Positions 8,497 to 27,774 of a stretch of 64,000 nucleotides of DNA are shown one piece after another (position 1 is the stretch's first letter; every line of letters starts with the position of its first letter). The notes below the pieces were generated by a model. That model ran no database searches and had not been told where the DNA came from. It saw only the letters and a list, made by a program, of their open reading frames with translations. Location of the stretch: the IMG/VR virus record IMGVR_UViG_3300043464_002284, positions 124,001 through 188,000 of that record; one strand, 5' to 3'. The translations under genes were made by a program, and so were the position numbers.

Positions 8497-8575
8497 TAAG
8501 TCTATATCCCATAAGGACTTATGACGAGTATCGGATGCCCGTATTTGACGTAAGTCCTTTGTTGTAAGGTACTTA
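8497..8575. repeat. Double-palindrome element 1 (period 54)
   Basis: Palindromes start at 8497 and 8551. Confidence 0.85.
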
Positions 8576-8614
8576 GGCAAGTCTGCGAGTCTGGCATGAC
8601 ATTTGCTGCTCAAA

Positions 8615-8632
8615 CCTTACGAAAATGTAAGG
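8615..8632. promoter_or_regulatory. CCTTAC-N6-GTAAGG palindrome upstream of -35 boxes (also at 9039, 10200, 12369, 14500)
   Basis: Five copies, each about 11-22 bp upstream of a TTGCAA/TTGACR hexamer. Confidence 0.7.
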
Positions 8633-8643
8633 AAATTTTCTGC

Positions 8644-8678
8644 TTGCAAGCAAAGTTTGGGTTGGTATAATGTCGATA
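8644..8678 (+). promoter_or_regulatory. Sigma70-type promoter with GTCGATA right after the -10
   Basis: TTGCAA-16-TATAAT-GTCGATA; same layout at 9068, 11253, 14528. Confidence 0.7.
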
Positions 8679-8710
8679 TGAAGAATAAGAGAAAGAAAAG
8701 AGGAAAAAAG

Positions 8711-9037
8711 ATGGAAAATCTGAATTACGATCTGGTTTCTGACTGCTGTGGTGCTGGTTGTGCTTTTGAGACCGGTGAGGGTAAGGATAAAATCGGGATT
8801 TGCATGGATTGCAAGGAATGGTGTGGTGTGGTAGAAGATATTCCGGAAGATGAGGATATGGTGAAAGCATTGAAAGATAATTCCATGACGATGGAAGAAT
8901 ATGATAGCCTGCCCGATTACATCCCCGGTCTTGACGACGGAGAGGGTTGGGACCCCATTATGGGGGATGCTGAAGATCATATCGAAACGGATGATCAGTG
9001 GCTCGACGATTTCTGTGGCGAAGAGGATTTTGCCTGA
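8711..9037 (+). CDS. Acidic hypothetical protein with CC/CxxC motifs
   Basis: SDCCGA...CMDCKEWC then D/E-rich tail; promoter and RBS upstream. Confidence 0.7.
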   Translation: MENLNYDLVSDCCGAGCAFETGEGKDKIGICMDCKEWCGVVEDIPEDEDMVKALKDNSMTMEEYDSLPDYIPGLDDGEGWDPIMGDAEDHIETDDQWLDDFCGEEDFA

Positions 9038-9132
9038 ACCTTACGAAATTGTAAGGAAACTTTCCGCTTGCAACCTACAGAATACTCTGTATAATGTCGA
9101 TATAAGAACAAGAGAACGATAAAGAAAAGGGA

Positions 9133-9381
9133 ATGAAAATGATCACCATCAACAATCGCGACGAACTGAACAACCTCCTCTATGGTGCTGATTCGACCAG
9201 CCCCGAAACTTTGGTTGGAATCGCTCGTATCGGCGGCGAGTTGCTCGCTGAGGCTTTCCACTATTACGAACTGAGCGACGGGACCGCTTCCATCGGAGAT
9301 TTCTTTCCCTGCGGCGATGAGGGTGAGGGGATCAATGTTGATCGCGACGGAAACATTCTTAGCGATTTTCTCTACTACTGA
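9133..9381 (+). CDS. Acidic hypothetical protein
   Basis: Promoter and RBS upstream. Confidence 0.65.
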   Translation: MKMITINNRDELNNLLYGADSTSPETLVGIARIGGELLAEAFHYYELSDGTASIGDFFPCGDEGEGINVDRDGNILSDFLYY

Positions 9382-9412
9382 ACAATGTACAGTAGTGTAC
9401 AATGATTCGACG

Positions 9413-9490
9413 TAAAGCCTTATGCTATAAGGACTTACGACAAATCCGGCCCGCCCCTTTTGACGTAACTCCTTGATGCGTATATACTTA
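9413..9490. repeat. Double-palindrome element 2 (core inverted)
   Basis: Starts 9413/9466; core CCGGCCCGCCCC. Confidence 0.9.
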
Positions 9491-10117
9491 CAGCAAATAT
9501 AAAAAATATTATGTTTGGCATGAAATTATATTTCAAAAATCCAAAGATTTCCCTTGCAACGGTCGATACATACTGTATAATGAAAGCACAAGAGAACGAT
9601 AGGACAAAGGAAAAGAAAATGACCAACGTATCTTTCGACATGGTGATGGCTGGCGTTCGACAGGTGTTCGGCAAGGAATCGTATCGTGTTCGGGTCGTCC
9701 ACTCTGGTGCATATACGAAAGTCGAATCGAAGGATATGTTTCACTCTGTAACGATCAAGTCGAATGAGACGATCATGGAAAAGCTGAATGAGCTGTTCTA
9801 TGATGTGGTGTGTGAGGATTGTGCGTCGGGCATCTAGGCTTGACAACACCATAGCGTATACGGTATAATAGAACCAACACAAGAAAGAAAAGGAAAAAGA
9901 TGTTTCAGACCAACTATAAAACTGTGACGAATAACCTTGACAAGCTTTTCTCTGCTATGCGAGCTGGTAAGTATCACTGCGTGCTCGACCCAAGGGGTAA
10001 CGCTCATGTGGGCCTTATCAATGGTATCATGCGTGAAGATGGTAGCGGAAAGAATTGGATCGTAATAGTGACCAACCGTACAGTAAGCGAAAAGGTCTTC
10101 ATTCACGCCTCATGACC

Positions 10118-10195
10118 TAAAGCCTTACCCTATAAACACTTAGGGCGAGGCCGGGCGCCCGCATCTGATGTAAGTCCTTATCTCATATAGGCTTA
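10118..10195. repeat. Double-palindrome element 3
   Basis: Starts 10118/10171. Confidence 0.9.
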
Positions 10196-10237
10196 TGAAC
10201 CTTACGATATTGTAAGGAAGAAAACTATTGCTAGAGC

Positions 10238-10266
10238 TTGACGTTGGTCGATAATAGGTGTAGAAT
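10238..10266 (+). promoter_or_regulatory. Sigma70-type promoter with CGATA spacer motif
   Basis: TTGACG-TTGGTCGATAATAGGTG-TAGAAT. Confidence 0.8.
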
Positions 10267-10527
10267 AAGAACACAAGAAAGAAAAGGAATCCCAATGATT
10301 ACGACTATCGAATACGTTCAGTTGTTTGCCTTGATTGCTTTTGCTGGTTTCATCTCGTACACTGCCCACGAGGTGGGTAACGCTATTCAATCCATTCTTC
10401 ACGACTGAGGGAATATGTCTAGGTATCTGCCTGATGGTTATGTAGATTATGCTACATACAATATCAAAGAAGTTTTACAGTTTCTTCAACAATTACTAGG
10501 AATCATTAGCGAAAGCTGGTAAACAAA

Positions 10528-10845
10528 ATGACACACTTTGAAGCAGTAAAGATGGTTCGTGGTAAGACTAATAAGGATACTCGCAAGGTTGGCAACAATA
10601 CCTATGCGGAAATTCTTCCCGATGGTAGCGTAGGCATTATGCTGCATAGTACCTATGTGGTAAAGATTCATCCTGACAACTCTGCTACCCTCAATAGTGG
10701 GGGGTGGCATACTGCTACCACTAAGGATAGAATCAACCAGTATTCACCTGTACGGGTATATCAACGCAAGGGACAATGGTATCTGGAATGTGGTCTAGAG
10801 TATGAAGATGGTATGATTGTGGCCGATAATAACCTTATCTACTAA
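10528..10845 (+). CDS. Phage hypothetical protein
   Basis: GNNT...LHST...LNSGGWHTATTKDRIN motif seen in phage early hypothetical proteins. Confidence 0.6.
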   Translation: MTHFEAVKMVRGKTNKDTRKVGNNTYAEILPDGSVGIMLHSTYVVKIHPDNSATLNSGGWHTATTKDRINQYSPVRVYQRKGQWYLECGLEYEDGMIVADNNLIY

Positions 10846-11085
10846 GAAAGAAAAAAGATGAAAAACGTTTTTACCTTTACGATTGCTTGGGGCGTTTCAA
10901 TTTGTTTGCTTGTTGCAGTAATGCAGGCTACTGGTTTGGGGCATCCTAACTGTGAGCCTACTACTGTAGGATATGCTGAATTCTACGCTACACTGTTCGG
11001 ATGTTCAGTGCTCAGTTGTATACTAGGTATGGCTTGCCTTGGGCTGGTCGTTCTGGTATATCCACAAAAAACATAGCACTAGCCG

Positions 11086-11163
11086 TAAACCCTTGCTGCT
11101 AAAGGACTTAGGGCAAGGCGGGCGGGCCGGGATCGACGTAAGTCCTTATGGCGTATGCACTTA
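11086..11163. repeat. Double-palindrome element 4
   Basis: Starts 11086/11139; core GGCGGGCGGGCCGG. Confidence 0.9.
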
Positions 11164-11871
11164 CGACAACTTAGCAAATACTATGCCAATATCAAAGAAA
11201 ATGACGAAAAGTTTTGTCAAATTCTCTTGACATAAAAATATCCGGATTTCTCTTGAAAGCTCAAGATGAGCATGGTATAATGTCGATATAAGAGATAGAG
11301 AAGAAAGAAAGAGAGAGTTGAGATGGAAAAAGTTACGAGTGTGAATGGTTTCATTGCTTCGCTTCCCAAGATTCGGAAGCGTAAGATTTGGAGTGTGACG
11401 ATTGACGGAAAGATTGTTCAAGGCGTGAGTGCTGACGACAATCGTAAGGAAACTGCTGAAGCGTATATCGCCAGCAAGTATCCTGGTCAAGCTTTCACTC
11501 TCAAGTTTGTTGAGTGGAGAATCTGACCCCCATTAGAGGGGATTGACAAGCACAAAAACTTTGATAGAATACCAGAAAGAGAAAGAGAGAAAAGAATGTA
11601 CGAGATTGGCGACAGTGTGATGCTCAAGGGATTCGAGAAACAGATTGTTGGAAAGATTGTTTCCTACCACTATGATGAGGGAAATGTGTGGACGGTTAGG
11701 ATGCCCGGTGGGCAGCAATGGGATTTTGGCGACCATGAGCTTTCGCCCGCGGTTGATGCCTACGGACAACCCTGGACTTATCGACCCACCCATAGTGGGG
11801 GTTGATAGGCAAAAGAATTGTTGATAGAATCCACACACAAGAGAACGATAGACCTTAGAGAGAAAAAGAAA

Positions 11872-12252
11872 ATGAAAACCAAGTTCCCTATCATCGAAAA
11901 TGCCAAGCGTCAAGCCCGTATGATCTTCAAGGGTATCGCCGTGCCGATGCTCGTGGAAATCCCCGATGATAAGGTTGTGGATGATGTCGATTACGTTTAC
12001 GGTGTGACTGACCACAAGCGTTACGTCATGAGCGAAAAGGTTCTCAAGTTCAATCGTACCGCACTGAAGAACATTGGCAAGGTTCGCAAGGAAAAGGCTG
12101 ACCCCCGCTATGTGGGGGGTGAGGATACCATGATCGTTCCGGTTGGCAAGCCGGGAAGTCGTGAGCGTGTCGAGGAACTGACCAGACAGTATGCTGCCAT
12201 TGCTGCTTGTGGTGAAGAAATCAGCCCGTTCAGCTTCAAGAGTGATGAATAA
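11872..12252 (+). CDS. Hypothetical protein
   Basis: RBS; GC-richer codon usage. Confidence 0.65.
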   Translation: MKTKFPIIENAKRQARMIFKGIAVPMLVEIPDDKVVDDVDYVYGVTDHKRYVMSEKVLKFNRTALKNIGKVRKEKADPRYVGGEDTMIVPVGKPGSRERVEELTRQYAAIAACGEEISPFSFKSDE

Positions 12253-12287
12253 ACGCACACTACTGCACAAAGACATAGCAGTTGACC

Positions 12288-12365
12288 TAAAGCGTTACCC
12301 TATAAGGACTTAGGGCAAACGCGCCCGCCCTTATTTGACGTAAGTCTTTATGTCTCAACAACTTA
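12288..12365. repeat. Double-palindrome element 5 (core inverted)
   Basis: Starts 12288/12341; core GCGCCCGCCC. Confidence 0.9.
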
Positions 12366-12692
12366 CAACCTTACAACATTGTAAGGAAACTTTTCCTGCT
12401 CTAACCTGTTGACATTGGACGATAATAGAGGTATAATCGTAAGACAAGAGGGAGAGAATAAAGATGAAAGATATGAACACTCGTACAATGCAAGACATTC
12501 TGAGGAATACCCAGATCAAGCTGGAAACTTGCACAATTCCCGAAGTAAGGGATGGCTATAAGCTGCTGATCAGGCACCTTGCTAGTGAACTTCTGTTTAG
12601 GTATCGTCTAGCCAAATAGCCTAAAGTTTTGCATGGTAGAATGTCGATAATAGGTATAGGGAAAACGAGAACTAACAACAAAGAGGAAAAGT

Positions 12693-12896
12693 ATGGATAA
12701 TCTCACGTTGCCGCAGAGACATGATTGGGTAGCTTTTGACTATAAGGGTAAGAGTTTCAAGGGTGAAGTTCGTAGGGTTTACGATAAGCCCAAGGGTCAT
12801 TTGATGATTGTGAAATTGGGTGAGGGTAAGTATCGTTCGTGCTATCTTGAGCAGTGCGGGAATCTAACTGCTATCTCTACTCAACCGGAGGCTTGA
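12693..12896 (+). CDS. Small SH3/WYL-like beta protein
   Basis: VAFDYKG...GKYRSCYLEQC resembles the WYL F-x-Y...R-x-F-x-x-x-R pattern. Confidence 0.35.
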   Translation: MDNLTLPQRHDWVAFDYKGKSFKGEVRRVYDKPKGHLMIVKLGEGKYRSCYLEQCGNLTAISTQPEA

Positions 12897-13272
12897 ATAT
12901 GAGCGATTTTATTATGGTGTGGGTCTGGGTGGCGGTTATGTGTGGGGTTTTGTTCTTTGCTTATTTTCTCACTATTGTGGGAGAAGTTTGGCAGAGGATA
13001 AACGAGTATGAGAATATGCGGGCCAGGGGTTTTACTCTTATGAAGAATGATGAGGGTGATGATTTCTGGGTAGGATACGGGGATTGACCACTTAAACCAA
13101 AATGGAGATACAGGGATGTATCAGTTTGATTTTATTAGTGTGGCTTTTGGGTATATTGTTGGTATTATTCTGTATGCTAGTATGTCAAATATCATGTATA
13201 TGGAGGAAAATGATGAAAATCAGTGATTATGTTCTATTAGGGGTGTGCTTCATTCTAGGATGTGGCTTAACG

Positions 13273-13350
13273 TATCTCCTTCACCAGTAAGGACTTACGG
13301 CGAGTCCGGCCCGCCCCGCAAAGCGTAAGTCTTTATCTATCAACACTTTA
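13273..13350. repeat. Double-palindrome element 6 (core inverted; overlaps the end of a small ORF)
   Basis: Starts 13273/13326. Confidence 0.85.
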
Positions 13351-13414
13351 CGTCAACTGCAAAATTTTTTCTATTTGGCACGGAATTATATTCTGGAATT
13401 TTCCAAGTTACTGC

Positions 13415-13443
13415 TTGACACTGGCCGATAATAAGAGTATAAT
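13415..13443 (+). promoter_or_regulatory. Consensus sigma70 promoter with GCCGATA spacer motif
   Basis: TTGACA-CTGGCCGATAATAAGAG-TATAAT. Confidence 0.85.
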
Positions 13444-13720
13444 CGCAGCATCACGAACGGAAACCACAGGAACCAGAATCATGCTGAATTTCGACGAGAT
13501 CAATGCTATTCTGAACGACATGGCCGAAGCGGGAATTGTTGAGCCGATGGTTGAGCCTATCGACGACCCCAGTGTAGAAGTCAACTTTTGGGATTGGGCC
13601 GATGTTGTGGGTGCTATTGACGACTTTGTTCCAGAGGAGTATACTAATGCTTAGTGCGATTGCTTTTGTTGTCGGATACGTTGGCCTGTTTTACATCACC
13701 ACCATCGTGAGGGATTGACC

Positions 13721-13996
13721 ATGAGCTACGAGTATGATGATCTTGAAGACTTTTATGGTATCGACGCTGATGATCGTACTAACGATTATTGGGCTGGAGA
13801 TGATGACTTGGAGAATGATTCTAATGATTCGTTTGATGATAGTATGGATGGCGATGCTGAGTCTGCGTTGGCTTCCGCTGGATGGGGAACCGACGAGGAT
13901 TACGGTTACTATGGTGACGATGGAGTAGAAGATTTCCACGCCGATGAGGCTGTGGGATTTGTGGATTACAATGAAGACGGGCCATATAACGACTAA
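13721..13996 (+). CDS. Extremely acidic small protein (DNA-mimic candidate)
   Basis: About one third D/E, one Arg, no Lys, aromatic-rich. Confidence 0.65.
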   Translation: MSYEYDDLEDFYGIDADDRTNDYWAGDDDLENDSNDSFDDSMDGDAESALASAGWGTDEDYGYYGDDGVEDFHADEAVGFVDYNEDGPYND

Positions 13997-14012
13997 TTAA
14001 AAGGAAAGAACA

Positions 14013-14405
14013 ATGCAGTATCGAAAGATTGCGACGGGGATGATCGAAGCTACATATGAGAATTATTCACAGTGGCTAGAAGATGGTGTTCTGGCTGAAG
14101 AATTGAATAAGTATGAAATTCCAGTATGGAATGAAATGAACGATAGTACCAAGTGTTCTGCCATAGAATATGTTTATCTGAACCGAGATACTATTGAGCT
14201 ACATTCTGGACTTGTAGAATCATGGGTACAAGCTACGGCTTACTTTATGATCTATGATTTTGCTACTATCCTAGCACATGACGGAAATCCAGAAATCGAA
14301 ATTTTCTTTGATGATATGGATTTCATGATGGATGAAGATACCCTGAACGATGAAGATGTTCAGGAGCAACTTGGAATTAGTCCAGATTTTGGAGGAAAAT
14401 TCTAA
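14013..14405 (+). CDS. Acidic hypothetical protein
   Basis: AAGGAAAG RBS. Confidence 0.65.
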   Translation: MQYRKIATGMIEATYENYSQWLEDGVLAEELNKYEIPVWNEMNDSTKCSAIEYVYLNRDTIELHSGLVESWVQATAYFMIYDFATILAHDGNPEIEIFFDDMDFMMDEDTLNDEDVQEQLGISPDFGGKF

Positions 14406-14415
14406 GCACTCTCCG

Positions 14416-14493
14416 TAAACCCTTTGTGCATAAGCACTTAGGGCTGGCGGGGCGGGCCGATTTTGATGTAAGTCCTTATACCACAATACTTTG
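14416..14493. repeat. Double-palindrome element 7
   Basis: Starts 14416/14469. Confidence 0.9.
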
Positions 14494-14921
14494 CGACAAC
14501 CTTACGGTATTGCAAGGAGACATCCACTTGACATCTAAAGTTTCTCTGCTATACTTGTCGATATAAGAGATAGAGAAAGAGAGAGTGAAGAATGAGTAGG
14601 TATTACGAAGGTCGTTTCAACCCGTACAATCGTCATGATACGGGAATGTATGTGGTCTATCGCAAGAGCGACAACAAGCACCTTGGAACGGTTGTGGATT
14701 GTCGTAGTGAGAGCGAAGCCAAGCGCAAGGCTGGCTATGAGTTTGGTTGTGAGTGCTATGTGAGTGAAATTGAGGAATAAAATGAAAACGAAAAAGAAAG
14801 AGTTGACAGCACACCAGAAAGCTGTTATACTCATGAATCGTGAAGCTAGTCGTGCAGTGAATCGTGTGAAGATGTTGGAACAGTTGTATCTTGAAACCAT
14901 GAAAGCAAAGGAACTTGTTAA

Positions 14922-15152: not shown

Positions 15153-15171
15153 AAAAAATAATCTCTCGTCG

Positions 15172-15249
15172 TAAACCCTTTGTGCTCAAACACTTAGGGC
15201 CGACGCGGGGAGCCGGATTTGACGTAAGTCCTTATCTTGCATAGGGTTG
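15172..15249. repeat. Double-palindrome element 8
   Basis: Starts 15172/15225. Confidence 0.9.
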
Positions 15250-15330
15250 TGACGAAAGAGAATTTCTTACCGAATCTATTGACAATAGCCGATACTCCTG
15301 TAGAATGACTCAACCAAAGGAGGACAAGCT

Positions 15331-15878: not shown

Positions 15879-15955
15879 CAAGTCCTTGACTCCAAAGAAC
15901 TTGGGGCAAGGGCGGGCGCCCGGATTGTTATAACTCCTTATCGAATAAAGACTTA
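15879..15955. repeat. Double-palindrome element 9 (period 52)
   Basis: Starts 15879/15931. Confidence 0.85.
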
Positions 15956-16664: not shown

Positions 16665-16742
16665 TAACCCTTTGACACCAAAGGACTTAGGGTAAGGTCG
16701 GCCGCCCCGCTTCGTCGTAAGTCTTTATGCCCCAACACTTTA
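16665..16742. repeat. Double-palindrome element 10 (core inverted)
   Basis: Starts 16665/16718. Confidence 0.9.
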
Positions 16743-17539: not shown

Positions 17540-17617
17540 TAAGTCCTTATCCTTAAAGAACTTAGGGATAGGGCGGGCGGACGAATTTGATGTAAGTGCT
17601 TGTGTATCATAGGGTTA
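17540..17617. repeat. Double-palindrome element 11
   Basis: Starts 17540/17593. Confidence 0.9.
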
Positions 17618-19250: not shown

Positions 19251-19328
19251 TAAGTCCTTGCTGCTAAAGAACTTAGCTCAAGGGCGGGCGGCCGGTTTCG
19301 ACGTAAGTCCTTATCTCTAAAGACTTTA
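19251..19328. repeat. Double-palindrome element 12
   Basis: Starts 19251/19304. Confidence 0.9.
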
Positions 19329-20505: not shown

Positions 20506-20583
20506 TAAAGCCTTGTCCCTAAAGAACTTAGGGCGAGGCTGGGCGGCCGAATTTGATCTAAGTCCTTATCCCCAAACAACTTA
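20506..20583. repeat. Double-palindrome element 13
   Basis: Starts 20506/20559. Confidence 0.9.
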
Positions 20584-21047: not shown

Positions 21048-21062
21048 GTTAACAAAACTGGA

Positions 21063-21307: not shown

Positions 21308-21344
21308 CTTGCGGCGTTGAGTGGGTACGATATAATAGAGAGAC

Positions 21345-21416
21345 GGCCCCATAGTTAAATGGATATAATAAGTGACTTCTAATCTCTAGTTGCAGGTTCG
21401 ATTCCTGCTGGGGCTA
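21345..21416 (+). tRNA. tRNA-Arg(TCT)
   Basis: Cloverleaf; loop CTTCTAA; T arm GCAGG-TTCGATT-CCTGC. Confidence 0.85.
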
Positions 21417-21421
21417 TTGTT

Positions 21422-21495
21422 GGGGGCGTAGATCAATTGGTTAGATCGCTAGCTTGTCACGCTAGAGGTTGCGGGTTCGAGTCCCGTCGCTCTCG
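21422..21495 (+). tRNA. tRNA-Asp(GTC)
   Basis: Cloverleaf; CTAGC-TTGTCAC-GCTAG. Confidence 0.92.
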
Positions 21496-21502
21496 TTTGT
21501 TG

Positions 21503-21580
21503 TAAACCCTTGCTACTAAAGCACTTAGAGCAAGTTCGCCGGGCCGGGGTCGTCGTAAGTCCTTATCTCACAAGGGTTTG
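21503..21580. repeat. Double-palindrome element 14 (directly after tRNA-Asp)
   Basis: Starts 21503/21556. Confidence 0.9.
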
Positions 21581-21660
21581 CATCAAGAATAATTTTGTGA
21601 AGTTTTTCGCTTGACGTTGCCGATACTATAGTGTAGAATCGGTAGACACAGGAGAAGAAC

Positions 21661-22365
21661 ATGAAAACTGCTGACGGTAATGATAAGTTGGGTAAGGGTT
21701 GTATTGTTGTGAGTCGTCCGGTTGGCGATACTTGCCCACCCGATTGCGATTATCTCGGAAACGGCTGCTATGCCGAAGCTACTGAAAACCAGTATAAAAA
21801 TGCTCGCACTGCCGGGTTTGCTAATATCATAACGGAAAAGAATAAAATCCGCTCTATGATTCTGGAAGCAAAGCGTCGTGAGAAGTCTATCCGTTGGCAT
21901 GAACGTGGCGACTGGTTTCTCAATGGCGAACTTGACCTAGACTATGTTGCGAATGTAACGTGGGCTTGTGAGAGTATTCTTGCCGATGGTGATACGTTGC
22001 CCGATATGTGGTTTTATACTCATATCTACGATTCTCGGCTTGTGAGTCTGGAAAAGTATATGAATGTATACGCTAGTGTGCATGATGATAACGATATGGG
22101 CGAAGCACTATCACAGGGTTTCAAGCTGTTCGCATGGTGTGACAGCGATATGAAGATTGCACCCAAGCGACCCAAGAGCAAGGCAAAGGCCGAAGCATGG
22201 CGACAAGCACTGCCGAAGCTGGTGGTTCTCAATGCGACAAAGTTTGTTGTGTGTCCAGAAATCCGTCGTGGTCGTTCGGAAATCACTTGCACTGGCACAA
22301 AAGATAGTATATCATGCGACTTGTGTGTGCGTGGTTTGGCTAATGTATTGTTTCCCGCACACTAA
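21661..22365 (+). CDS. Gp88-like Cys-motif phage protein
   Basis: TCPPDC...GCYA...IRWHERGD...FYTH pattern; C-terminal CP...C...C..C. Confidence 0.6.
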   Translation: MKTADGNDKLGKGCIVVSRPVGDTCPPDCDYLGNGCYAEATENQYKNARTAGFANIITEKNKIRSMILEAKRREKSIRWHERGDWFLNGELDLDYVANVTWACESILADGDTLPDMWFYTHIYDSRLVSLEKYMNVYASVHDDNDMGEALSQGFKLFAWCDSDMKIAPKRPKSKAKAEAWRQALPKLVVLNATKFVVCPEIRRGRSEITCTGTKDSISCDLCVRGLANVLFPAH

Positions 22366-22368
22366 ACC

Positions 22369-22446
22369 TAAGTCCTTGACCGTAAAGAACTTACGGCAAG
22401 GGCGAGCGGACGGATCGGTCGTAAGTCCTTGACTCATAAGACTTTA
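22369..22446. repeat. Double-palindrome element 15
   Basis: Starts 22369/22422. Confidence 0.9.
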
Positions 22447-22529
22447 GAGATTATTCAAGTTTCACTATTGCATTTGTCGATAAGATACTGTAGAATGGTG
22501 GAGTATCACCAACTTGGAAAGGGAAAGCT

Positions 22530-23096
22530 ATGAGCTATGTTGGATTGTATGATGACGCAGGAAGTAAGAACGCTTTCTACATTGTCAAAGATAAAAAGAT
22601 TGGCCGGAAGCGTGTGGGCTTCAAAGAGTTTGAAAATAAGCAAGAGGCAGAGTTTGCCCATCGGGTTCAAAAGCATCTGGCTCAGTTTGATTTGGCCCCT
22701 ATGGTATATGGGGATGTTGGTTTTATTCGTAGGCATGATGGTGAGTTGACTTGTTATGGTTATTTGACCGAAGTGGCTCGGCCTATGTCTGAATGTCATG
22801 ATGAAGATTGTGATGGTGAATGTTTTCGGAGCGAGTGTAAGAATGGTACTACTATCTCTGAACTAGTTTATGATTTGGGTGAACATGGCTTAGAGTATAA
22901 CGATGCCCATAAGGGTAATTTTGGTTATGTTCGACGTAAGGGTTCATGGGTTCCGGTTGCTATCGACCTTGGAATCGAGAGCTTTACTGATTGGGATGAA
23001 GATATTTATGGAAAGTTTGATTATGCTGCTGACGAGTTTGATGACTATGGACGATGCAATTGTGTTCAATGCAAAAAGTTCCGAGAGGAAGAATAA
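22530..23096 (+). CDS. Protein-kinase-like (ePK/APH fold) protein
   Basis: LAPMVYG, DAHKGNFG (HxxN), AIDLG (DxG); C-terminal CxCxxC. Confidence 0.6.
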   Translation: MSYVGLYDDAGSKNAFYIVKDKKIGRKRVGFKEFENKQEAEFAHRVQKHLAQFDLAPMVYGDVGFIRRHDGELTCYGYLTEVARPMSECHDEDCDGECFRSECKNGTTISELVYDLGEHGLEYNDAHKGNFGYVRRKGSWVPVAIDLGIESFTDWDEDIYGKFDYAADEFDDYGRCNCVQCKKFREEE

Positions 23097-23499
23097 TGAG
23101 CAAATACTATATCAAGTGTGGAACACTAGAATTAATTTATTCCTGCAACAAATGTCCACGGGATGCTGCGATGGATGCTATTTGGGAAACAAATGAAAAT
23201 GATACACTAGATGAGCATTTCTATATAGATGAGCGTGGATATAAAGACTATACAAATGCTGATGGATTAACTTGTGTGTTACATACTAGCCACATTCTAA
23301 AAGATGCCGGATGGAGTATTGAATAATGTGGACAAAAATAGACGATAAAAAAGTAAGACACTTATGGGAATGTGCTGATTGTGATAATCTAGTTTATGTT
23401 GAACCTTGGTTCTATTCCGAAAATGGCGAACCCTTTTGCACAAAGTGTGAGAGGGATATGGAGTATATTCGAACAGAAGTGGATATGTAACACTTTCCG

Positions 23500-23577
23500 C
23501 AAACCCTTGCTGCGTAAGCACTTAGGGTGAGCGGGGGCGGCCGGATTTGACGTAAGTTGTTGCAGGATGCGGACTTA
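23500..23577. repeat. Double-palindrome element 16
   Basis: Starts 23500/23553. Confidence 0.9.
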
Positions 23578-23615
23578 GAGAAATTCCAGAAAACTCCTAA
23601 AGTTTAGGGTGGTGA

Positions 23616-24029
23616 TTGGTCGATAATAAGGATATGAGAACGAGACGAGAATCAACAAGGGGTGAGAGAATGATCCAGTGGGTTGGGATTGTGATTACGA
23701 TTTTGGGTCTGGCGTATACGGGTGTGAAGGACTACCAGAAAGGGGACATAAAATTTCCCAAGATGCCTCAAAAACAGGTCTTGACAAAGGTAGTTTATCC
23801 GATACAATACTGTCTGATGGCTTACGATCCTAACATTGATAGAATTTTTTACCTACACGAAAATGGAATATGGTATGATTACGCTCCACAACAACGACGA
23901 TATTCGACCACGCCGCAACCATATCAAGCTCAAGGTGCGACCGCAGTGGCAGGTTCCTACGGGTCACAAGGAACACCGGCATACCGTTATGGACAATCGC
24001 CCCAAGCGTCAGCGAACCCGATCCGCTGA
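23616..24029 (+). CDS. Membrane-anchored hypothetical protein
   Basis: TM helix WVGIVITILGLAY. Confidence 0.55.
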   Translation: MVDNKDMRTRRESTRGERMIQWVGIVITILGLAYTGVKDYQKGDIKFPKMPQKQVLTKVVYPIQYCLMAYDPNIDRIFYLHENGIWYDYAPQQRRYSTTPQPYQAQGATAVAGSYGSQGTPAYRYGQSPQASANPIR

Positions 24030-24079
24030 AAATCGTAGGGCTTGCGAGAATGGGGACTATTGAGTATAATTAGTAGTAT

Positions 24080-24152
24080 GCCAGTGTAGCTCAGTCAGCA
24101 GAGCGTCAAATTTGTAATTTGAATGTCGCGGGTGCAACTCCTGCCACTGGCT
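24080..24152 (+). tRNA. tRNA-Thr(TGT)
   Basis: GCCAGTG/CACTGGC acceptor; TCAAA-TTTGTAA-TTTGA; atypical D and T loops. Confidence 0.8.
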
Positions 24153-24218
24153 TTATGAGTCGAAAGAAAAAACGTATGTAAACGCTCTATCTGGTGTATA
24201 TATTCGTATCCAGAGGAG

Positions 24219-24746
24219 ATGTCTATGATTGTAAAATGTAGTTGCTGTAATAAAGAGTTTAATAAGCAGAAGTGCGAGGTAATTAAGTCAAAAAATAATT
24301 ACTGCTCACGTTCCTGTGCAGCAAAAATAAACAATAGGTTATTTAAAAAGAGAAACAAAAAAGTTAGACATTGTAGGAACTGTAAGATTGAAATTATTGG
24401 CAAGGGAAAACTTTATTGTAGTATTAAATGTCAAAATGTTTTTCAGTCAGAAATAAAGATAAAGTCATGGCAGCTAGGAATGGACGATGGATACGAAACT
24501 AATGGAACAGTAAGGAGATATATAAAAAAATTCTTACTGGAAAAAAGAGGTCAGAAATGTGAGGAGTGTGGTTGGAATAAAATTAATCCAAATACCAATA
24601 AGTGTCCATTGGAAATACATCATAGGGATGGAAATTATAAAAATAATATAGAAGAAAACTTACAAATACTATGTCCGAATTGCCATTCATTGACAGATAC
24701 ATATAAGAATATGAACAAAGGTAATGGTAGAGAATGCAGAAGATGA
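24219..24746 (+). CDS. HNH endonuclease inserted in the tRNA cluster
   Basis: CEECG...LEIHHRDG...NN...NLQILCPNCH; N-terminal CSxxC repeats. Confidence 0.88.
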   Translation: MSMIVKCSCCNKEFNKQKCEVIKSKNNYCSRSCAAKINNRLFKKRNKKVRHCRNCKIEIIGKGKLYCSIKCQNVFQSEIKIKSWQLGMDDGYETNGTVRRYIKKFLLEKRGQKCEECGWNKINPNTNKCPLEIHHRDGNYKNNIEENLQILCPNCHSLTDTYKNMNKGNGRECRR

Positions 24747-24817
24747 TCCGGGATGGTGAAATGGTATCACAGCAGACTTTGGATCTGCGTTTCTACGTTC
24801 AAGTCGTAGTCCCGGAA
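24747..24817 (+). tRNA. tRNA-Gln(TTG)
   Basis: TCCGGGA/TCCCGGA; GCAGA-CTTTGGA-TCTGC. Confidence 0.9.
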
Positions 24818-24821
24818 TTAT

Positions 24822-24893
24822 TGGCGAGTAGCACAACGGTTGTGCAAGCGGCTGTTAACCGCTAGGTTACAGGTTCGAATCCTGTCTCGCCAG
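24822..24893 (+). tRNA. tRNA-Asn(GTT)
   Basis: TGGCGAG/CTCGCCA; AGCGG-CTGTTAA-CCGCT. Confidence 0.9.
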
Positions 24894-24898
24894 CTTGA

Positions 24899-24985
24899 GG
24901 AAGAATGGCAGAGTGGTCTAATGCATCTGATTACTAATCAGAAGAAGCGTAAAAACTTCCGTGGGTTCGAATCCTACTTCTTCCG
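24899..24985 (+). tRNA. tRNA-Ser(ACT)
   Basis: GGAAGAA/TTCTTCC, G73, long variable arm, TCTGA-TTACTAA-TCAGA. Confidence 0.85.
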
Positions 24986-24988
24986 CTC

Positions 24989-25070
24989 GGTAGATTACTC
25001 AAGTGGACAACGAGGGCAGACTGTAAATCTGCTGGCATTGCCTTCGCTGGTTCGAATCCAGCATCTACCA
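24989..25070 (+). tRNA. tRNA-Tyr(GTA)
   Basis: GGTAGAT/ATCTACC; GCAGA-CTGTAAA-TCTGC; long variable arm. Confidence 0.92.
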
Positions 25071-25071
25071 C

Positions 25072-25149
25072 TAAGTTGTTGGTATGAAAGGACTTAGGAC
25101 AAATTCGGCGGGCCGCGTTCGACGTAAGTGATTACAGAGTAACGACTTA
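25072..25149. repeat. Double-palindrome element 17 (directly after tRNA-Tyr)
   Basis: Starts 25072/25125. Confidence 0.9.
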
Positions 25150-25234
25150 GGATTTGTTTAAAGTTTGTTCTTGACAGCTGCCGATAACTAGTGTATGATT
25201 GCTAATCGGAGGCTGATGTTTGAGTTGCGAGTGC

Positions 25235-25306
25235 GGCCCCATAGTATAGTAGTTAGTACGCTGGCCTTTCACGCCGGAGACCTGGGAGCGTAACCCAGTG
25301 GGGTCA
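25235..25306 (+). tRNA. tRNA-Glu(TTC), atypical T loop
   Basis: GGCCCCA/TGGGGTC; CTGGC-CTTTCAC-GCCGG; T loop AGCGTAA. Confidence 0.75.
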
Positions 25307-25307
25307 T

Positions 25308-25357
25308 TTGTTTCTGCTAATCCTACGGATTTGGAAGTTGTGGAAGTAGTCAGCGAG
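25308..25357 (+). repeat. 50-bp ungapped motif, copy 2 (immediately after tRNA-Glu)
   Basis: TTGTTTCTGCTAATCCTACGGATTTGG...TAGTCAGCGAG. Confidence 0.85.
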
Positions 25358-25613
25358 AATTTCTAAACATTTGCCTCTTGACAAGCCGATAATGGTATGG
25401 TAGACTATTGGAATAAGAAAGGAACCTAAGATGAAGAACCTTCGCATCTATGATATTGTGACCGAGGACGGTCAAACCCTGGCTGACATTCAACTCTCTA
25501 TGCAAGAGGATTTTGATTGGGCTGATGTTTTTGATAAGCTCTATGATTTTACCACAGAAAACGTCCAAAGTTATTCCTACCAAGAAATTACCGTACAAAC
25601 TGAATAACTAGAT

Positions 25614-25686
25614 GGGCCTTTAGCTCAATTGGCAGAGCAAGGAGCTTTTAACTCTTAGGTTCGGGGTTCGAGTCCCCGAGGGCCCA
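25614..25686 (+). tRNA. tRNA-Lys(TTT)
   Basis: GGGCCTT/AGGGCCC; AGGAG-CTTTTAA-CTCTT. Confidence 0.92.
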
Positions 25687-25740
25687 CTTGACAATGGTTG
25701 GTTGTTGGTGTAGAATATGGGTAAGAAAGGGAGTAGAAAT

Positions 25741-25917
25741 ATGAGATATGAAGATTATTATGATGGCTACAACTATGACTATGATGAATTGGTAGAAAAT
25801 ACCGAGGATCTTGGTCTGGATGAAGAACCTTGGATGAATGATATTGAGGAAGAAGATGACGAGGTTCCATCTTACGGTAAGAATTATTATCCAAGTATTG
25901 AAGATGAAGATGAATAA
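25741..25917 (+). CDS. Very acidic small protein
   Basis: D/E/Y-rich; RBS GGGAG. Confidence 0.6.
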   Translation: MRYEDYYDGYNYDYDELVENTEDLGLDEEPWMNDIEEEDDEVPSYGKNYYPSIEDEDE

Positions 25918-25922
25918 TTTTT

Positions 25923-26003
25923 GTGTGTGCTTCTAGGTGGGACTAGAACCTTTTCTTTATTCCTTTCTTATAATGGGCTGTTGGTTCAAATCCAACCACA
26001 CAC
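25923..26003 (+). pseudogene. tRNA-like element with degenerate anticodon arm
   Basis: GTGTGTG/CACACAC acceptor; GTTGG-TTCAAAT-CCAAC T arm; TTCTAG/CTAGAA D-like arm; pyrimidine tract in place of the anticodon arm. Confidence 0.55.
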
Positions 26004-26006
26004 TTT

Positions 26007-26513
26007 ATGAACGCTTGGCAACAAGAGCTTGATGACTTCCGGCGTACCCCAGATGGTAAGATTATCCAAGGTGCTGCTCACACTAGCCGAGTATTAAATC
26101 ACAAATATCGGAATGGTGTGATTATCAAGGCTGTTTGTTCTCTGCGTAAAATTGAGAATAATTTCGATAGCATTGCTTGTTGTGGCGTAAGTGGTTTGAT
26201 GGTAGTGCCACAGATTGCAGAGATTCTCAATAAGAATATTATAGTTGTTCGTAAGGATGAAAAGCGATATAGCGAATTCTTTCTTGAGGGTGTCTCTCCG
26301 TCTCGATATATTATTGTAGATGATTTGATCTGTTCTGGAAATACTCTTAAGCATATTATTGCTAGTATTTCTGATGATACTCCAAGAGCAAAGTGTATCG
26401 GGGCGTACTTCTATCTCGGTGAGGAATGTTCTTTCAATGCTTCCACCGATTCTAAATTTTTTGAGAAGCAGTTTGGGACGATTATCCTAAACCCTTACCA
26501 GCCAAAGACTTAG
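26007..26513 (+). CDS. Type I phosphoribosyltransferase-family protein
   Basis: PRPP-binding motif IIVDDLICSGNT. Confidence 0.8.
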   Translation: MNAWQQELDDFRRTPDGKIIQGAAHTSRVLNHKYRNGVIIKAVCSLRKIENNFDSIACCGVSGLMVVPQIAEILNKNIIVVRKDEKRYSEFFLEGVSPSRYIIVDDLICSGNTLKHIIASISDDTPRAKCIGAYFYLGEECSFNASTDSKFFEKQFGTIILNPYQPKT

Positions 26514-26565
26514 GACGAATCCGGACGCCCCGGCCAGCCGTAAGTCCTTATCCTGAAACAACTTA
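26488..26565. repeat. Double-palindrome element 18 (core inverted; overlaps the PRTase 3' end)
   Basis: Starts 26488/26541. Confidence 0.9.
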
Positions 26566-26667
26566 CGACCTGCGGAATTTTTCCAAGGTTTTCGCTTGAC
26601 AGTGACGATAACATAGTGTAGAATCAGCGTATAAGAACGATTGAACAGCAACACGAAAGGGATGATT

Positions 26668-27618
26668 ATGGCTCATGCAGTTGAACAGATGATGTTTGTT
26701 GGTGCGACCCCGTGGCACGGTCTGGGCAACCAGCTCGACGAGGCTCCCACGGTTTCGGAGGCGATGACTGCCGCCGGTTTGGATTGGGAAGTTGGTCTGA
26801 AGGATTTGGTCACGGTGGACGGTCAACCAGTTCCGGCCCGTGCGACCTATCGCAAGACCGACGACAGTATTCTGGGCGTTGTCGGCCCGCGATACACTCC
26901 GCTGCAAAACAGCGAAGCGTTCGATTGGTTCCAGCCGTTTCTGGACGCTGGTGAGTGTGCGTTGCATACTGCCGGTTCGCTCCACAGCGGTCAGAAAGTT
27001 TGGGTTCTGGCCCAACTGAACCGCGACAATAGCGAGATCGTGAAGGGCGACGAGGTTGGGAAGTTTATTCTTCTCAGCAACTCGCACGATGGCACGACTG
27101 CTATCCGGGTTGGCTATACGCCGATCCGCGTTGTGTGTGCTAATACTATGGCAATGGCCCATAGCAAGAGCAGTGGTTCCAAGTTGATCCGTATTCGTCA
27201 CACACGTTCCAGCAAGACGAATCTGGAAAACGTGCGAGACATTATGGACAACATCAACATGGAGTTTGAGGCGACTGCGGAGCAATTCAAGTTCCTCGCG
27301 TCGAAGAACTTCAATCAGGCCGACGTTCGTCGCTATGTCAAGGTGATGCTCGACATCGACGGTACGCCGGACGATCAGATCAAGACTCGTACCAGAAACA
27401 TCATGGACGAGATTCTGAATCTGGTCGAAGGCCCGAAGCAGAGTGCTACGGGCGTTCGCGGAACGTGGTGGGCCGCTTATAACGGCTTCAACGAGTATCT
27501 GAATTACAACAAGGGTCGCACCGAAGATAATCGGCTCGACAGTCTGTGGTTCGGATCGAACGCGAATGACAACACCAAGGCTCTGGAAAAGGCCATGCAG
27601 TTCGCTCAGGCACTCTAA
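26668..27618 (+). CDS. DUF932 family phage/plasmid-like protein
   Basis: TPWHGLG...AGLDWEV...YTPLQN...TAGSL..GQKVW...LLSNSHDG...TPIRVVCANT...RHT...W.AYN...EY. Confidence 0.9.
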   Translation: MAHAVEQMMFVGATPWHGLGNQLDEAPTVSEAMTAAGLDWEVGLKDLVTVDGQPVPARATYRKTDDSILGVVGPRYTPLQNSEAFDWFQPFLDAGECALHTAGSLHSGQKVWVLAQLNRDNSEIVKGDEVGKFILLSNSHDGTTAIRVGYTPIRVVCANTMAMAHSKSSGSKLIRIRHTRSSKTNLENVRDIMDNINMEFEATAEQFKFLASKNFNQADVRRYVKVMLDIDGTPDDQIKTRTRNIMDEILNLVEGPKQSATGVRGTWWAAYNGFNEYLNYNKGRTEDNRLDSLWFGSNANDNTKALEKAMQFAQAL

Positions 27619-27642
27619 TACCTCGTAGTGGGGGTAATGTGG

Positions 27643-27677
27643 GAGCCGCCACTCAGCAATGGGTGGCGGTTCTTTTT
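27643..27677 (+). terminator. Strong intrinsic terminator
   Basis: GAGCCGCCACTCA-GCAA-TGGGTGGCGGTTC followed by T5. Confidence 0.9.
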
Positions 27678-27696
27678 ACTCCTAGACCACTTGACG

Positions 27697-27774
27697 TAAA
27701 CCCTTATCTGACAAGGACTTACGACAAGGCGGGGCGCCCGAAATTTCTCTAAGTTATTTGATACCAACGACTTA
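27697..27774. repeat. Double-palindrome element 19
   Basis: Starts 27697/27750; further solo palindromes at 27799, 27850, 28013 and 28562. Confidence 0.9.

What the first reader, a model, noticed from the sequence alone, without database searches (positions are those of the whole stretch)
8497..27774. Array of 19 helically phased double-palindrome elements tiling a 19-kb early region
Seen: each element is TAAGTCCTT-N7-AAGGACTTA, a 28-bp GC-rich core, then a second copy of the palindrome. The period is 53 bp (five turns of B-DNA) in 17 of 19 copies, and 54 and 52 in the other two. The N7 centres vary freely while TAA, CTT, AA and CTTA positions are held. Copies recur every 0.7-1.7 kb (mean about 1.07 kb) and paired copies stop at 27.8 kb. 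Two overlap ORF 3' ends (13273, 26488). Inference: variable centres with fixed phasing point to two dimers of one DNA-binding protein on the same helix face, possibly with a third factor on the core. That would be a nucleoprotein lattice over the early DNA. Possible roles: protecting or pulling in first-entering DNA, insulating or switching all early modules together, tethering/partitioning, or titrating a host protein. The 9-7-9 geometry also resembles tyrosine-recombinase core sites. I do not recognise this as a described phage system.
Basis: partly seen in the sequence, partly recalled or inferred. Interest (0 to 1): 0.92.

Follow-up and report, generated by a model that had tools for sequence, protein, structure and literature searches.

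The report
Phased double operators before phage promoters
A large uncultivated phage, probably of Planctomycetota, places the same 78-bp double palindrome in a fixed helical register upstream of about 19 strong early promoters, which looks like binding sites for one DNA-binding protein that controls or insulates all these small gene units together.

Summary
There are 19 double-palindrome elements, all in + orientation, between 8497 and 27774. The pal1-to-pal2 period is 53 bp in 17 copies and 54 and 52 bp in the other two.

The family is widespread. I found 248 copies on 56 IMG/VR loci, in syntenic arrays with about 1 kb spacing.

It is not an RNA or ssDNA hairpin under selection. No pairing register shows more base pairs than independent columns would give. 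There is no U-tract and no Rfam match. The conserved features are:
- sequence: TAA..CCTT-N7-AAGG..TTA, with the inner half-sites strongest;
- spacer length, and its G+C-richness around a fixed GG-N4-CC.

Each element starts 0-36 nt after a stop codon or tRNA 3' end in most copies. It lies upstream of a near-consensus sigma70-type promoter.

New result: the distance from pal2 to the -35 is quantised at about 20, 30.5, 41.5, 52 and 63.5 nt, a 10.5-11 bp period (0 of 20000 random sets match). So pal1, pal2 and the promoter share one helical register.

Best reading: phased double operators for an unidentified dimeric DNA-binding protein that co-regulates or insulates about 19 early units. The elements also serve as recombination linkers, as PeSL cassettes do in T4-type phages.

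Verdict: a new variant of a known kind. The binder and the sign of regulation are unknown.

The parts
8497..8575 (+). Element 1 (period 54), first of the array, 111 nt after the subtilase ORF end (8385)
   Evidence: A sigma54-like TGGCATGACATTTGC lies at 8592. A promoter TTGCAA-16-TATAAT lies at about 8644-8671.
9413..9490 (+). Element 2
   Evidence: The promoter -35 is at 9554, 63 nt after pal2.
10118..10195 (+). Element 3; starts 2 nt after the stop of ORF 9900-10115
   Evidence: The -35 is at 10238 (42 nt).
11086..11163 (+). Element 4
   Evidence: A sigma54-like motif lies on the minus strand at 11188. The -35 is at 11253 (89 nt).
12288..12365 (+). Element 5
   Evidence: The -35 is at 12409 (43 nt).
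13273..13350 (+). Element 6; pal1 overlaps the end of ORF 13102-13290
   Evidence: The -35 is at 13415 (64 nt).
14416..14493 (+). Element 7
   Evidence: The -35 is at 14528 (34 nt, off-phase, 16-nt promoter spacer).
15172..15249 (+). Element 8
   Evidence: The -35 is at 15279 (29 nt). The following module m08 is absent in several relatives.
15879..15955 (+). Element 9 (period 52; pal1 ends C..G instead of T..A)
   Evidence: The -35 TTGCAT is at 15994 (38 nt, off-phase).
16665..16742 (+). Element 10
   Evidence: The -35 is at 16774 (31 nt).
17540..17617 (+). Element 11; starts 3 nt after the stop of ORF 17333-17536
   Evidence: The -35 is at 17659 (41 nt).
19251..19328 (+). Element 12; starts 2 nt after the stop of ORF 18994-19248
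   Evidence: The -35 is at 19359 (30 nt).
20506..20583 (+). Element 13; starts 2 nt after the stop of ORF 20039-20503
   Evidence: The -35 is at 20625 (41 nt).
21503..21580 (+). Element 14; starts 6 nt after the tRNA-Asp 3' end (21496)
   Evidence: The -35 is at 21611 (30 nt).
22369..22446 (+). Element 15; starts 3 nt after the stop of ORF 21661-22365
   Evidence: The -35 TTGCAT is at 22468 (21 nt).
23500..23577 (+). Element 16; no good -35 downstream, only the CGATA spacer motif and a degenerate -10
25072..25149 (+). Element 17; starts at the base after the tRNA-Tyr 3' end (25071)
   Evidence: The -35 is at 25171 (21 nt), and this promoter precedes tRNA-Glu.
26488..26565 (+). Element 18; pal1 lies inside the end of ORF 26007-26513 (PRTase-like)
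   Evidence: The -35 is at 26596 (30 nt).
27697..27774 (+). Element 19, last full copy, the most symmetric one; follows the DUF932 gene
   Evidence: (+ strand 78.9 bits, minus strand 61.5 bits).
28011..28063 (+). Degenerate single pal2-like copy fused to a promoter; CTTGCGACAA supplies the -35
28559..28612 (+). Second single pal2-like copy fused to a promoter (TTGCGT-17-TATACT, with CGATA in the spacer)

Best explanation
Each element is a pair of operators on duplex DNA. Each 9-7-9 palindrome would bind one dimer of a sequence-specific DNA-binding protein. The inner half-sites (TAAGTCCTT) are strong and the outer ones weak. The two dimers sit five helical turns apart across a stiff G+C-rich spacer whose length matters but whose sequence does not.

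The pair lies a whole number of turns upstream of a near-consensus sigma70-type promoter (TTGACA, CGATA in the spacer, TGnTAGAAT). The centre of pal2 falls near -69, -79, -90, -100 or -111. The bound protein therefore faces RNA polymerase from a fixed side.

One factor could then set the activity of about 19 independent early transcription units together. Because these promoters are already close to consensus, shut-off or holding of polymerase is more likely than activation.

The element begins within a few bases of the preceding stop codon or tRNA end. The bound complex would therefore also mark the boundary of the upstream unit.

As a side effect, the 78-bp repeats act as linkers for homologous recombination that adds, removes and swaps gene modules, as PeSL cassettes do.

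Shown here: the anatomy, the absence of pairing constraint, both phasings, the position, family-wide conservation and module mosaicism. Inferred: protein binding, two dimers per element, contact with polymerase, and the sign of regulation. The binder is not identified and may be phage- or host-encoded.
For: Copies and anatomy:
- There are 19 copies, against 0.05 palindrome matches expected by chance.
- 248 copies lie on 56 viral loci in syntenic arrays.

No selection for pairing:
- The top mutual-information pairs are all neighbouring columns.
- RNAalifold gives no structure on either strand.
- Observed pairing equals that expected under column independence in every register.
- On 67 sequences less than 80% identical, paired cells are 75.1% against 76.1% shuffled for two hairpins, and 77.5% against 79.3% for one long hairpin.
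- Stem-centre pairs are mostly mismatched: pal1 pairs 18:36 and 19:35 are paired in 24% and 29% of copies, pal2 pairs 73:87 and 74:86 in 29% and 22%.
- The core is no more stable than shuffles, z = +0.3.

What is constrained:
- The period is 53 bp in 192 pairs, 52 in 13 and 54 in 2, although 129 of 164 cores are different sequences.
- The N7 and core centres drift among orthologues at about the rate of other unconstrained patches.

Promoter link:
- A consensus promoter follows 17 of the 19 elements.
- The pal2-to-(-35) distances fall at 19-21, 29-31, 39-45, 52, 63-64 and 80 nt. Counting 28 unrelated spacer-sequence clusters once each gives Rayleigh R = 0.76 at 10.5-11 bp, reached by 0 of 20000 random sets. 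The window alone gives R = 0.61, p about 0.008.

Context:
- Elements start 0-10 nt after stop codons or tRNA ends in about ten of the 19 cases.
- In relatives lacking module m08, the junction element pairs the pal1 and core of one neighbour with the downstream flank of the other.
Against: - No DNA-binding protein was identified.
- The 9-7-9 layout puts half-site centres 16 bp apart, which is unusual for helix-turn-helix dimers.
- The same promoter type works without the element at 16161, 25387, 25688, 36043, 37296, 46097, 50467, 58505 and 61023, so the element is not needed for promoter function.
- Five window spacers are off-phase (34, 35, 38, 68 and 89 nt).
- In Planctomycetota genomes the same extended palindrome lies at the 3' ends of tRNA and tmRNA genes and between convergent genes. 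That fits a terminator or boundary role better than a promoter-proximal one.
- Spacer length classes could partly reflect shared ancestry that my clustering missed.
Confidence: 0.5

Rival explanations
1. RNA-level element. The palindromes fold in the transcript as terminator or 3'-end-protecting hairpins for each early unit and for the tRNA clusters. This is the stem-loop role in a classical PeSL.
For: - The element lies right after stop codons and tRNA 3' ends and before the next promoter.
- PeSL stem-loops are tested terminators (PMC2839356).
- In bacterial genomes the perfect palindrome follows tRNA and tmRNA genes by 0-7 nt, often with a T-run.
- Palindrome regions fold better than shuffles, z = -0.8 to -1.6.
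Against: - No excess of base pairs and no compensatory changes appear in any register.
- The stem centres are mostly mismatched on the transcribed strand.
- No U-tract follows either palindrome; CGACAA follows pal2.
- Two independent hairpins give no reason for a fixed 28-nt spacer or for helical phasing with the promoter.
- There is no Rfam match even at a lax threshold.
Confidence: 0.15
2. Architectural or topological site for a general host protein (gyrase, an IHF/HU-like protein), acting as a supercoil insulator between strongly transcribed tandem units.
For: - The element is a doublet of inverted imperfect palindromes between tandem strong promoters.
- The spacer is stiff, G+C-rich and of fixed length.
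- The behaviour is DNA-level with no pairing constraint.
Against: - Strict base-specific conservation of TAA, TT, AA and TTA across deep divergence is not typical of gyrase or nucleoid proteins.
- Phasing to the -35 points to a promoter-linked role.
- The palindrome is not high-copy in Planctomycetota loci: 1 extra site in 177 kb.
Confidence: 0.08
3. Selfish or passive repeat. Either a REPIN/MITE-like doublet that spread through the region, or a homology linker kept only because it promotes module shuffling, with no regulatory role.
For: - The inverted doublet of imperfect palindromes resembles REPINs.
- Modules are mosaic, with identity jumps of 6.6% across elements against 4.4% within modules, p = 0.008.
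- Modules are gained, lost and reordered among relatives.
Against: - All 19 copies have one orientation and sit at equivalent places, and none lies elsewhere in the 64 kb.
- Positions are conserved in syntenic arrays of distant relatives.
- Base-specific constraint coexists with freely drifting N7 and core.
- The element is phased to the promoters.
- No transposase-like gene was seen among the ORFs scanned.
- The excess of breakpoints at elements is modest.
Confidence: 0.1
4. Site-specific recombination sites. Each 9-7-9 palindrome would be a core site for a tyrosine recombinase, making the array an integron-like set of exchangeable cassettes.
For: - The 9-7-9 geometry fits.
- The one-long-hairpin form (outer stem, 7x7 loop, inner stem, variable apex) is laid out like a folded attC.
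- Elements follow ORF ends, and modules come and go.
- One Planctomycetota copy lies between a tRNA and an integrase gene.
Against: - No integrase was found in the window.
- N7 centres are nearly all different, which would block recombination between sites.
- Sequence is conserved and structure is not, the reverse of attC.
- Every module has its own promoter.
- Phasing with promoters is unexplained by this model.
Confidence: 0.07

Closest known systems
PeSL (promoter-early stem-loop) cassettes of T4-type phages (Arbiol et al. 2010, PMC2839356; Comeau et al. 2014, PMC4122927)
   Same: Both are repeated intergenic cassettes running from stop codon to start codon. Both lie in a region of small ORFans and contain a palindrome, then an AT-rich stretch, then a near-consensus sigma70 early promoter and a Shine-Dalgarno sequence. 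PeSL stems are often G-run/C-run, and here the core is G+C-rich with GG..CC. Both are associated with module gain, loss and replacement between relatives.
   Different: Here the palindromic part is a 78-bp double 9-7-9 palindrome with a fixed 53-bp register. It is conserved in sequence rather than in pairing, lacks terminator features, and is helically phased with the promoter. I found no description of such phasing or of conserved half-sites in the parts of the two PeSL papers that I read. Whether this phage is T4-type is unknown.
Face-of-helix-dependent upstream sites (CRP class I sites, Fis sites at rRNA/tRNA promoters, phi29 p4 sites)
   Same: All are dyad-symmetric sites upstream of -35 whose allowed positions differ by whole helical turns. 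Several sites lie in register. phi29 p4 is a phage protein that represses strong early promoters from such a site. This comparison rests on established knowledge, not on a test here.
   Different: Here there are 19 copies in one genome region. The site is 25 bp long (9-7-9). The phase differs from CRP's by about 3-4 bp. The binder is unknown and the sign of regulation is unknown.
Dispersed operator regulons of mobile elements (KorB OB sites of RK2, P1 C1 operators, cluster A mycobacteriophage stoperators)
   Same: One short conserved site is repeated many times through a replicon and ties many transcription units to one protein.
   Different: Those sites are single, 13-17 bp long and not paired in register. 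Stoperators are asymmetric and act inside transcription units.
REP/BIME/REPIN elements
   Same: Both are inverted doublets of imperfect palindromes in extragenic space, conserved in sequence rather than by compensatory change.
   Different: Here the copies are confined to one 19-kb region, all have one orientation, and all are phased to promoters. No RAYT-type gene was seen.
Integron attC sites / tyrosine-recombinase core sites
   Same: Both have 9-7-9 inverted arms, a position at ORF 3' ends and a variable central part.
   Different: Here there is no integrase. The conserved motif is TAAG/CTTA, not RYYYAAC/GTTRRRY. Structure is not conserved, and the cassettes carry their own promoters.

Membership tests
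PeSL-type regulatory cassette | Repeated intergenic motif between small ORFs, spanning stop codon to next start | tested here: met
PeSL-type regulatory cassette | Strong sigma70-like early promoter with an AT-rich upstream stretch | tested here: met
   17 of 19 elements are followed by TTGACA-type -35 and TAnAAT -10 boxes. Timing of expression was not tested.
PeSL-type regulatory cassette | Stem-loop that terminates upstream transcription | tested here: inconclusive
   Palindromes are present but show no pairing constraint and no U-tract. Termination itself cannot be tested with these tools.
PeSL-type regulatory cassette | Association with indels and replacements between related phages | tested here: met
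   Modules are absent, duplicated or reordered in relatives. Identity jumps are larger across elements than within modules, p = 0.008, a modest effect.
Intrinsic (rho-independent) terminator | G+C-rich stem followed directly by a U-tract | tested here: not met
   The stems are A+T-rich and are followed by GGGC or CGACAA. The G+C core is no more stable than shuffles.
Structured RNA / ssDNA hairpin | Base pairs kept by compensatory change | tested here: not met
Upstream operator / activator site acting on RNA polymerase | Dyad symmetry with conserved half-sites and a free centre | tested here: met
Upstream operator / activator site acting on RNA polymerase | Helical phasing relative to the promoter | tested here: met
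Upstream operator / activator site acting on RNA polymerase | Cognate DNA-binding protein | tested here: inconclusive
   No Pfam DNA-binding domain was found in the ORFs scanned. Only 64 kb of the genome is visible, and a host factor is possible.
REP/REPIN | Dispersed extragenic copies in either orientation with an associated RAYT transposase | tested here: not met
   The copies form one cluster in one orientation. No transposase was found among the scanned ORFs, though the scan was not exhaustive.
Integron cassette array | IntI integrase, attI and Pc next to the array | tested here: not met
   Neighbouring genes are a sigma-like ORF, two unknown ORFs, GlmS and a subtilase. A phmmer search with a Planctomycetota integrase found nothing.
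Integron cassette array | attC with conserved structure and variable sequence; promoterless cassettes | tested here: not met
Tyrosine-recombinase core site | Inverted arms around a 6-8 bp overlap that is identical between partner sites | tested here: inconclusive
   The geometry is met. N7 is unique in 19 of 19 pal2 copies and 15 of 19 pal1 copies.

The most novel reading that the evidence does not exclude
The same extended palindrome (TTGTCG-TAAGTCCTT-N7-AAGGACTTA-CGACAA) lies 0-7 nt after tRNA and tmRNA genes in Planctomycetota genomes, and perfect copies of the core palindrome lie between convergent genes there. It could therefore be the site of a sequence-specific, DNA-bound boundary or termination factor of the host. 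These phages would have copied that site and doubled it to wall off and co-regulate each early unit. That would be a protein-dependent transcription boundary system not described in bacteria.
Probability: 0.1. Interest if true: 0.85.

Novelty: new variant of a known kind. Interest (0 to 1): 0.6.

Why it matters
If the reading is right, one protein-DNA interaction governs about 19 promoters of a large phage's early, fast-evolving gene region. That would be a compact handle on early gene timing in a phage group with no cultured member that I could find.

The element is easy to recognise. It could be used to find and delimit early regions and gene cassettes in metagenomic phage contigs, and it links these phages to Planctomycetota hosts.

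It also sharpens the PeSL idea. The repeated linkers that let phages shuffle small genes may be kept by a regulatory function rather than by recombination alone.

The two phasings give a clean and cheap experimental test: insert 5 bp versus 10 bp.

Tried and rejected
- RNA or ssDNA structure was rejected. I tested mutual information, RNAalifold on both strands, observed against expected pairing in all registers, per-sequence folding against shuffles, and the pair-count tool on two explicit structures.
- Rfam gave only tRNAs and the tmRNA, at both gathering and lax thresholds.
- A sigma70 promoter inside the element (TTGACG before each palindrome) was rejected, because no -10 lies at 16-19 bp. 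The TGA of this motif is often the stop codon of the upstream ORF.
- An oriented G-rich core motif was rejected. Flipping C-rich cores adds only 0.6 bit.
- Hypervariability of N7 and the core as a hotspot was rejected. The rate is similar to other unconstrained patches, and my flank filter biased the comparison.
- A megablast search of the INPHARED phage records found no relative.
- A high-copy REP family in the host was rejected: 1 extra site in 177 kb.
- The host regulon idea gave nothing. Genes next to genomic copies are unrelated: groEL, atpC, a tRNA methylthiotransferase-like radical SAM gene, prmC and an integrase.
- The binder search found nothing, and the integrase search found nothing.

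Full report
**1.
The palindrome TAAGTCCTT-N7-AAGGACTTA, allowing 3 mismatches, occurs 28 times in the window against 0.05 expected. All hits lie in 8497-27774. A profile built from the copies recovers 19 full double elements, each scoring best on the + strand. The rest of the 64 kb contains only three weak single palindromes just past the array.

The pal1-to-pal2 period is 53 bp in 17 copies, 54 bp at 8497 and 52 bp at 15879. Elements are 705-1711 bp apart, mean 1067.

**2. Setting.**
The window belongs to a large phage. It carries 12-13 tRNA genes and a tmRNA. It also encodes nucleotide-metabolism genes, a DNA ligase, GlmS, a subtilase and a DUF1501 protein. To my knowledge that family is typical of Planctomycetota.

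The array region has 40-48% G+C against 32-39% elsewhere. Its ORFs are almost all small and have no known domains. No close relative exists among deposited phage genomes.

**3. A widespread family.**
An exact-pattern scan of IMG/VR returned 56 loci from contigs up to 244 kb. These hold 248 elements, 164 of them distinct, in arrays with about 1 kb spacing. Most arrays are syntenic with the window's modules at 65-100% identity. More distant lineages keep the same doublet.

Over all loci the period is 53 bp in 192 pairs, 52 in 13 and 54 in 2.

**4. Anatomy.**
The consensus is TTGACG | TAAaccCTT-N7-AAGGACTTA | GGGCAAG-(G+C-rich, with fixed GG-N4-CC)-TTTGACG | TAAGTCCTT-N7-AAcaaCTTA | CGACAA.

- The whole 90 bp has dyad symmetry.
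- The two half-sites facing the core are nearly invariant, while the outer two are degenerate in their middle four bases.
- The N7 columns carry almost no information.
- 129 of the 164 cores are different sequences, made almost only of G and C.
- Among orthologous copies, N7 and the core centre drift at about the rate of other unconstrained positions.

**5. Not a hairpin under selection.**
- The strongest mutual information is between neighbouring columns only.
- RNAalifold returns no consensus structure on either strand.
- For the two small hairpins, for one long hairpin and for every register within the core, the fraction of standard pairs equals that expected from independent columns.
- On 67 sequences less than 80% identical, the pair-count tool gives 75.1% paired against 76.1% in shuffles for two hairpins, and 77.5% against 79.3% for one long hairpin. 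Covariation scores are below the shuffles.
- The centres of both stems are mismatched in most copies.
- The core is no more stable than shuffled sequence.
- No U-tract follows either palindrome, and Rfam has nothing on the elements even at a lax threshold.

What is conserved is therefore base identity at symmetric positions, spacer length and spacer composition. That is the signature of a protein recognising duplex DNA.

**6. Position.**
About ten of the 19 elements start 0-10 nt after a stop codon or a tRNA 3' end. Examples are 10115 to 10118, 15876 to 15879, 19248 to 19251, 20503 to 20506, and tRNA-Tyr ending at 25071 with the element starting at 25072.

Seventeen are followed by a near-consensus promoter with a TTGACA-type -35, a conserved CGATA in the spacer, and often an extended -10 (TGnTAGAAT). 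A Shine-Dalgarno sequence and start codon, or a tRNA gene, follow.

The same promoter type, with the same AT-rich proximal region, occurs without any element at nine other places in the window. The element is therefore an add-on to a subset of promoters and not part of the promoter.

**7. Phasing with the promoter (new).**
The number of bases between pal2 and the -35 is not free. In 101 distinct family members it falls at 19-21, 29-31, 37-46 (mode 41), 52 and 63-64, with a few longer values.

I clustered the intervening sequences and counted each of the 28 unrelated clusters once. This gives 19-21 (five clusters), 29-31 (nine), 39-45 (ten), 52, 63, 64 and 80. Rayleigh R is 0.76 at 10.5-11 bp, and none of 20000 random sets reaches it. 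The window alone gives R = 0.61, p about 0.008, with 34 nt (element 14416) and 35 nt (27697) off-phase. The spacers of elements 15879 (38 nt) and 8497 (68 nt) are also off-phase but were left out of this test because their promoters scored lower. The 89-nt spacer of element 11086, which was included, is off-phase too.

Spacers within one length class are unrelated in sequence. Length, not ancestry, seems to be what is kept.

With pal1 and pal2 five turns apart, all three sites share one helical register. Assuming a start site 7 nt after the -10, the pal2 centre lies near -69, -79, -90, -100 or -111. An RNA hairpin, a selfish repeat or a recombination site gives no reason for this.

**8. Evolutionary behaviour.**
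Modules show mosaic identity to relatives. Jumps across elements (mean 6.6%) are somewhat larger than within modules (4.4%), p = 0.008, although the data points are not independent.

Module m08 is missing in several relatives. The remaining junction element combines the pal1 and core of the upstream neighbour with the downstream flank of the other neighbour. Recombination therefore occurs within the elements, as described for PeSL cassettes.

**9. Bacterial genomes.**
Of these, 26 are from Planctomycetota and 41 from Spirochaetota.

Many hits, especially the spirochaete ones, look like ordinary terminators. Their N7 extends the stem and a T-run follows. Part of the excess is one orthologous tRNA locus. 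A palindromic query is expected to pick up such hairpins.

The Planctomycetota hits are more specific.
- Twelve of the 26 are associated with a tRNA or tmRNA gene. The eleven gaps I measured (four tmRNA, seven tRNA) are 0-7 nt after the 3' end.
- Six to nine carry the phage-type flanks TTGTCG...CGACAA.
- One has the family's consensus N7.

Other Planctomycetota copies lie between convergent genes, after atpC, 39 bp from groEL, or next to an integrase. The palindrome is not high-copy there, and the phage promoter motif is not enriched there.

This supports a Planctomycetota host. It leaves open a host-encoded binder or a boundary role. Two MAG contigs binned as Rhodobacteraceae and Enterobacterales carry whole arrays and are probably phage contigs.

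**10. Interpretation.**
The best-supported model is a phased double operator. Two dimers of one sequence-specific protein would be held in register with RNA polymerase at each of about 19 near-consensus early promoters. This would allow joint control of these units and mark unit boundaries. Shut-off is the more likely direction, because the promoters are already strong.

A recombination-linker role would come as a by-product. The binder is unknown. No DNA-binding domain was found in the visible ORFs, and no integrase was found.

The closest known kind is the PeSL cassette of T4-type phages. The differences are the double 9-7-9 palindrome, sequence rather than pairing conservation, and the two helical phasings. 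I therefore rate this as a new variant of a known kind, of moderate to high interest, with a mechanism that is still inferred.

Noticed in passing
window 8592-8606 (+), 11174-11188 (-); many in L012, L019, L031, L041, L049: A sigma54-type promoter motif, TGG[CT]A[CT]-N5-TTGC, occurs 55 times in 573 kb of window plus viral loci and 0 times in a shuffle. 36 copies lie within 200 bp of an element. 25 of these are on the opposite strand, most just 3' of pal2 and pointing into the element. L019 has three in tandem. It is unclear whether these are real promoters, polymerase parking sites or another protein's sites.
   Followed up: partly
window, 24 sites, e.g. 19359-19387, 21611-21639, 26596-26624, 58496-58525: This is a promoter family with a conserved CGATA(A/C) block inside the -35/-10 spacer and a TGnTAGAAT extended -10. 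The spacer block suggests an extra contact by a sigma or accessory factor.
   Followed up: partly
window 8000-28000 versus the rest: The array region has 40-48% G+C against 32-39% elsewhere. The elements are too small to explain this. The early genes may be tuned to a G+C-richer host codon pool, or the region may have a separate origin.
   Followed up: no
window 8620-8645, 10200-10222, 12369-12392, 14499-14521: A second small conserved hairpin, CCTTAC-N6-GTAAGG, follows pal2 in four elements and in several relatives (L011, L029, L049).
   Followed up: no
window 28011-28063 and 28559-28612: Single pal2-like copies past the array are fused to promoters, so that the arm-flank junction (CTTGCGACAA / CTTTGCGTCAA) provides the -35 hexamer.
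   Followed up: partly
window 52964-53318; 18178-18250: The phage carries a tmRNA gene (Rfam 91.5 bits). A tRNA-like sequence at 18178-18250 is called by Rfam (37.8 bits) but not by ARAGORN.
   Followed up: no
window 452-1150 (-): This ORF has a weak sigma70 region 2 match (E = 7e-5), so it may be a phage sigma factor. The two large ORFs next to it (2027-3535 and 3544-4341, minus strand) have no Pfam or PHROG match.
   Followed up: no
L105:3495-3576 (Thermoguttaceae MAG SKYB124); L122:6520-6600: L105 has a variant palindrome doublet, TAACTCCTT-N7-..GGAGTTA, with a 57-bp period. L122 has the phage-type palindrome next to a tRNA 3' fragment, with the same N7 and left flank as the copy beside the tRNA-Asn and integrase in L105. 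These may be ends of an integrated element.
   Followed up: partly
L084 (binned Rhodobacteraceae), L111 (binned Enterobacterales): Short MAG contigs carry 3 and 5 double elements. They are probably phage contigs placed in the wrong bins.
   Followed up: partly
L019, L020, L041, L053 downstream of elements: Distant lineages carry a different motif after the element, TTGACC-N3-ACGTGTCA(C), in place of the CGATA-type promoter.
   Followed up: no
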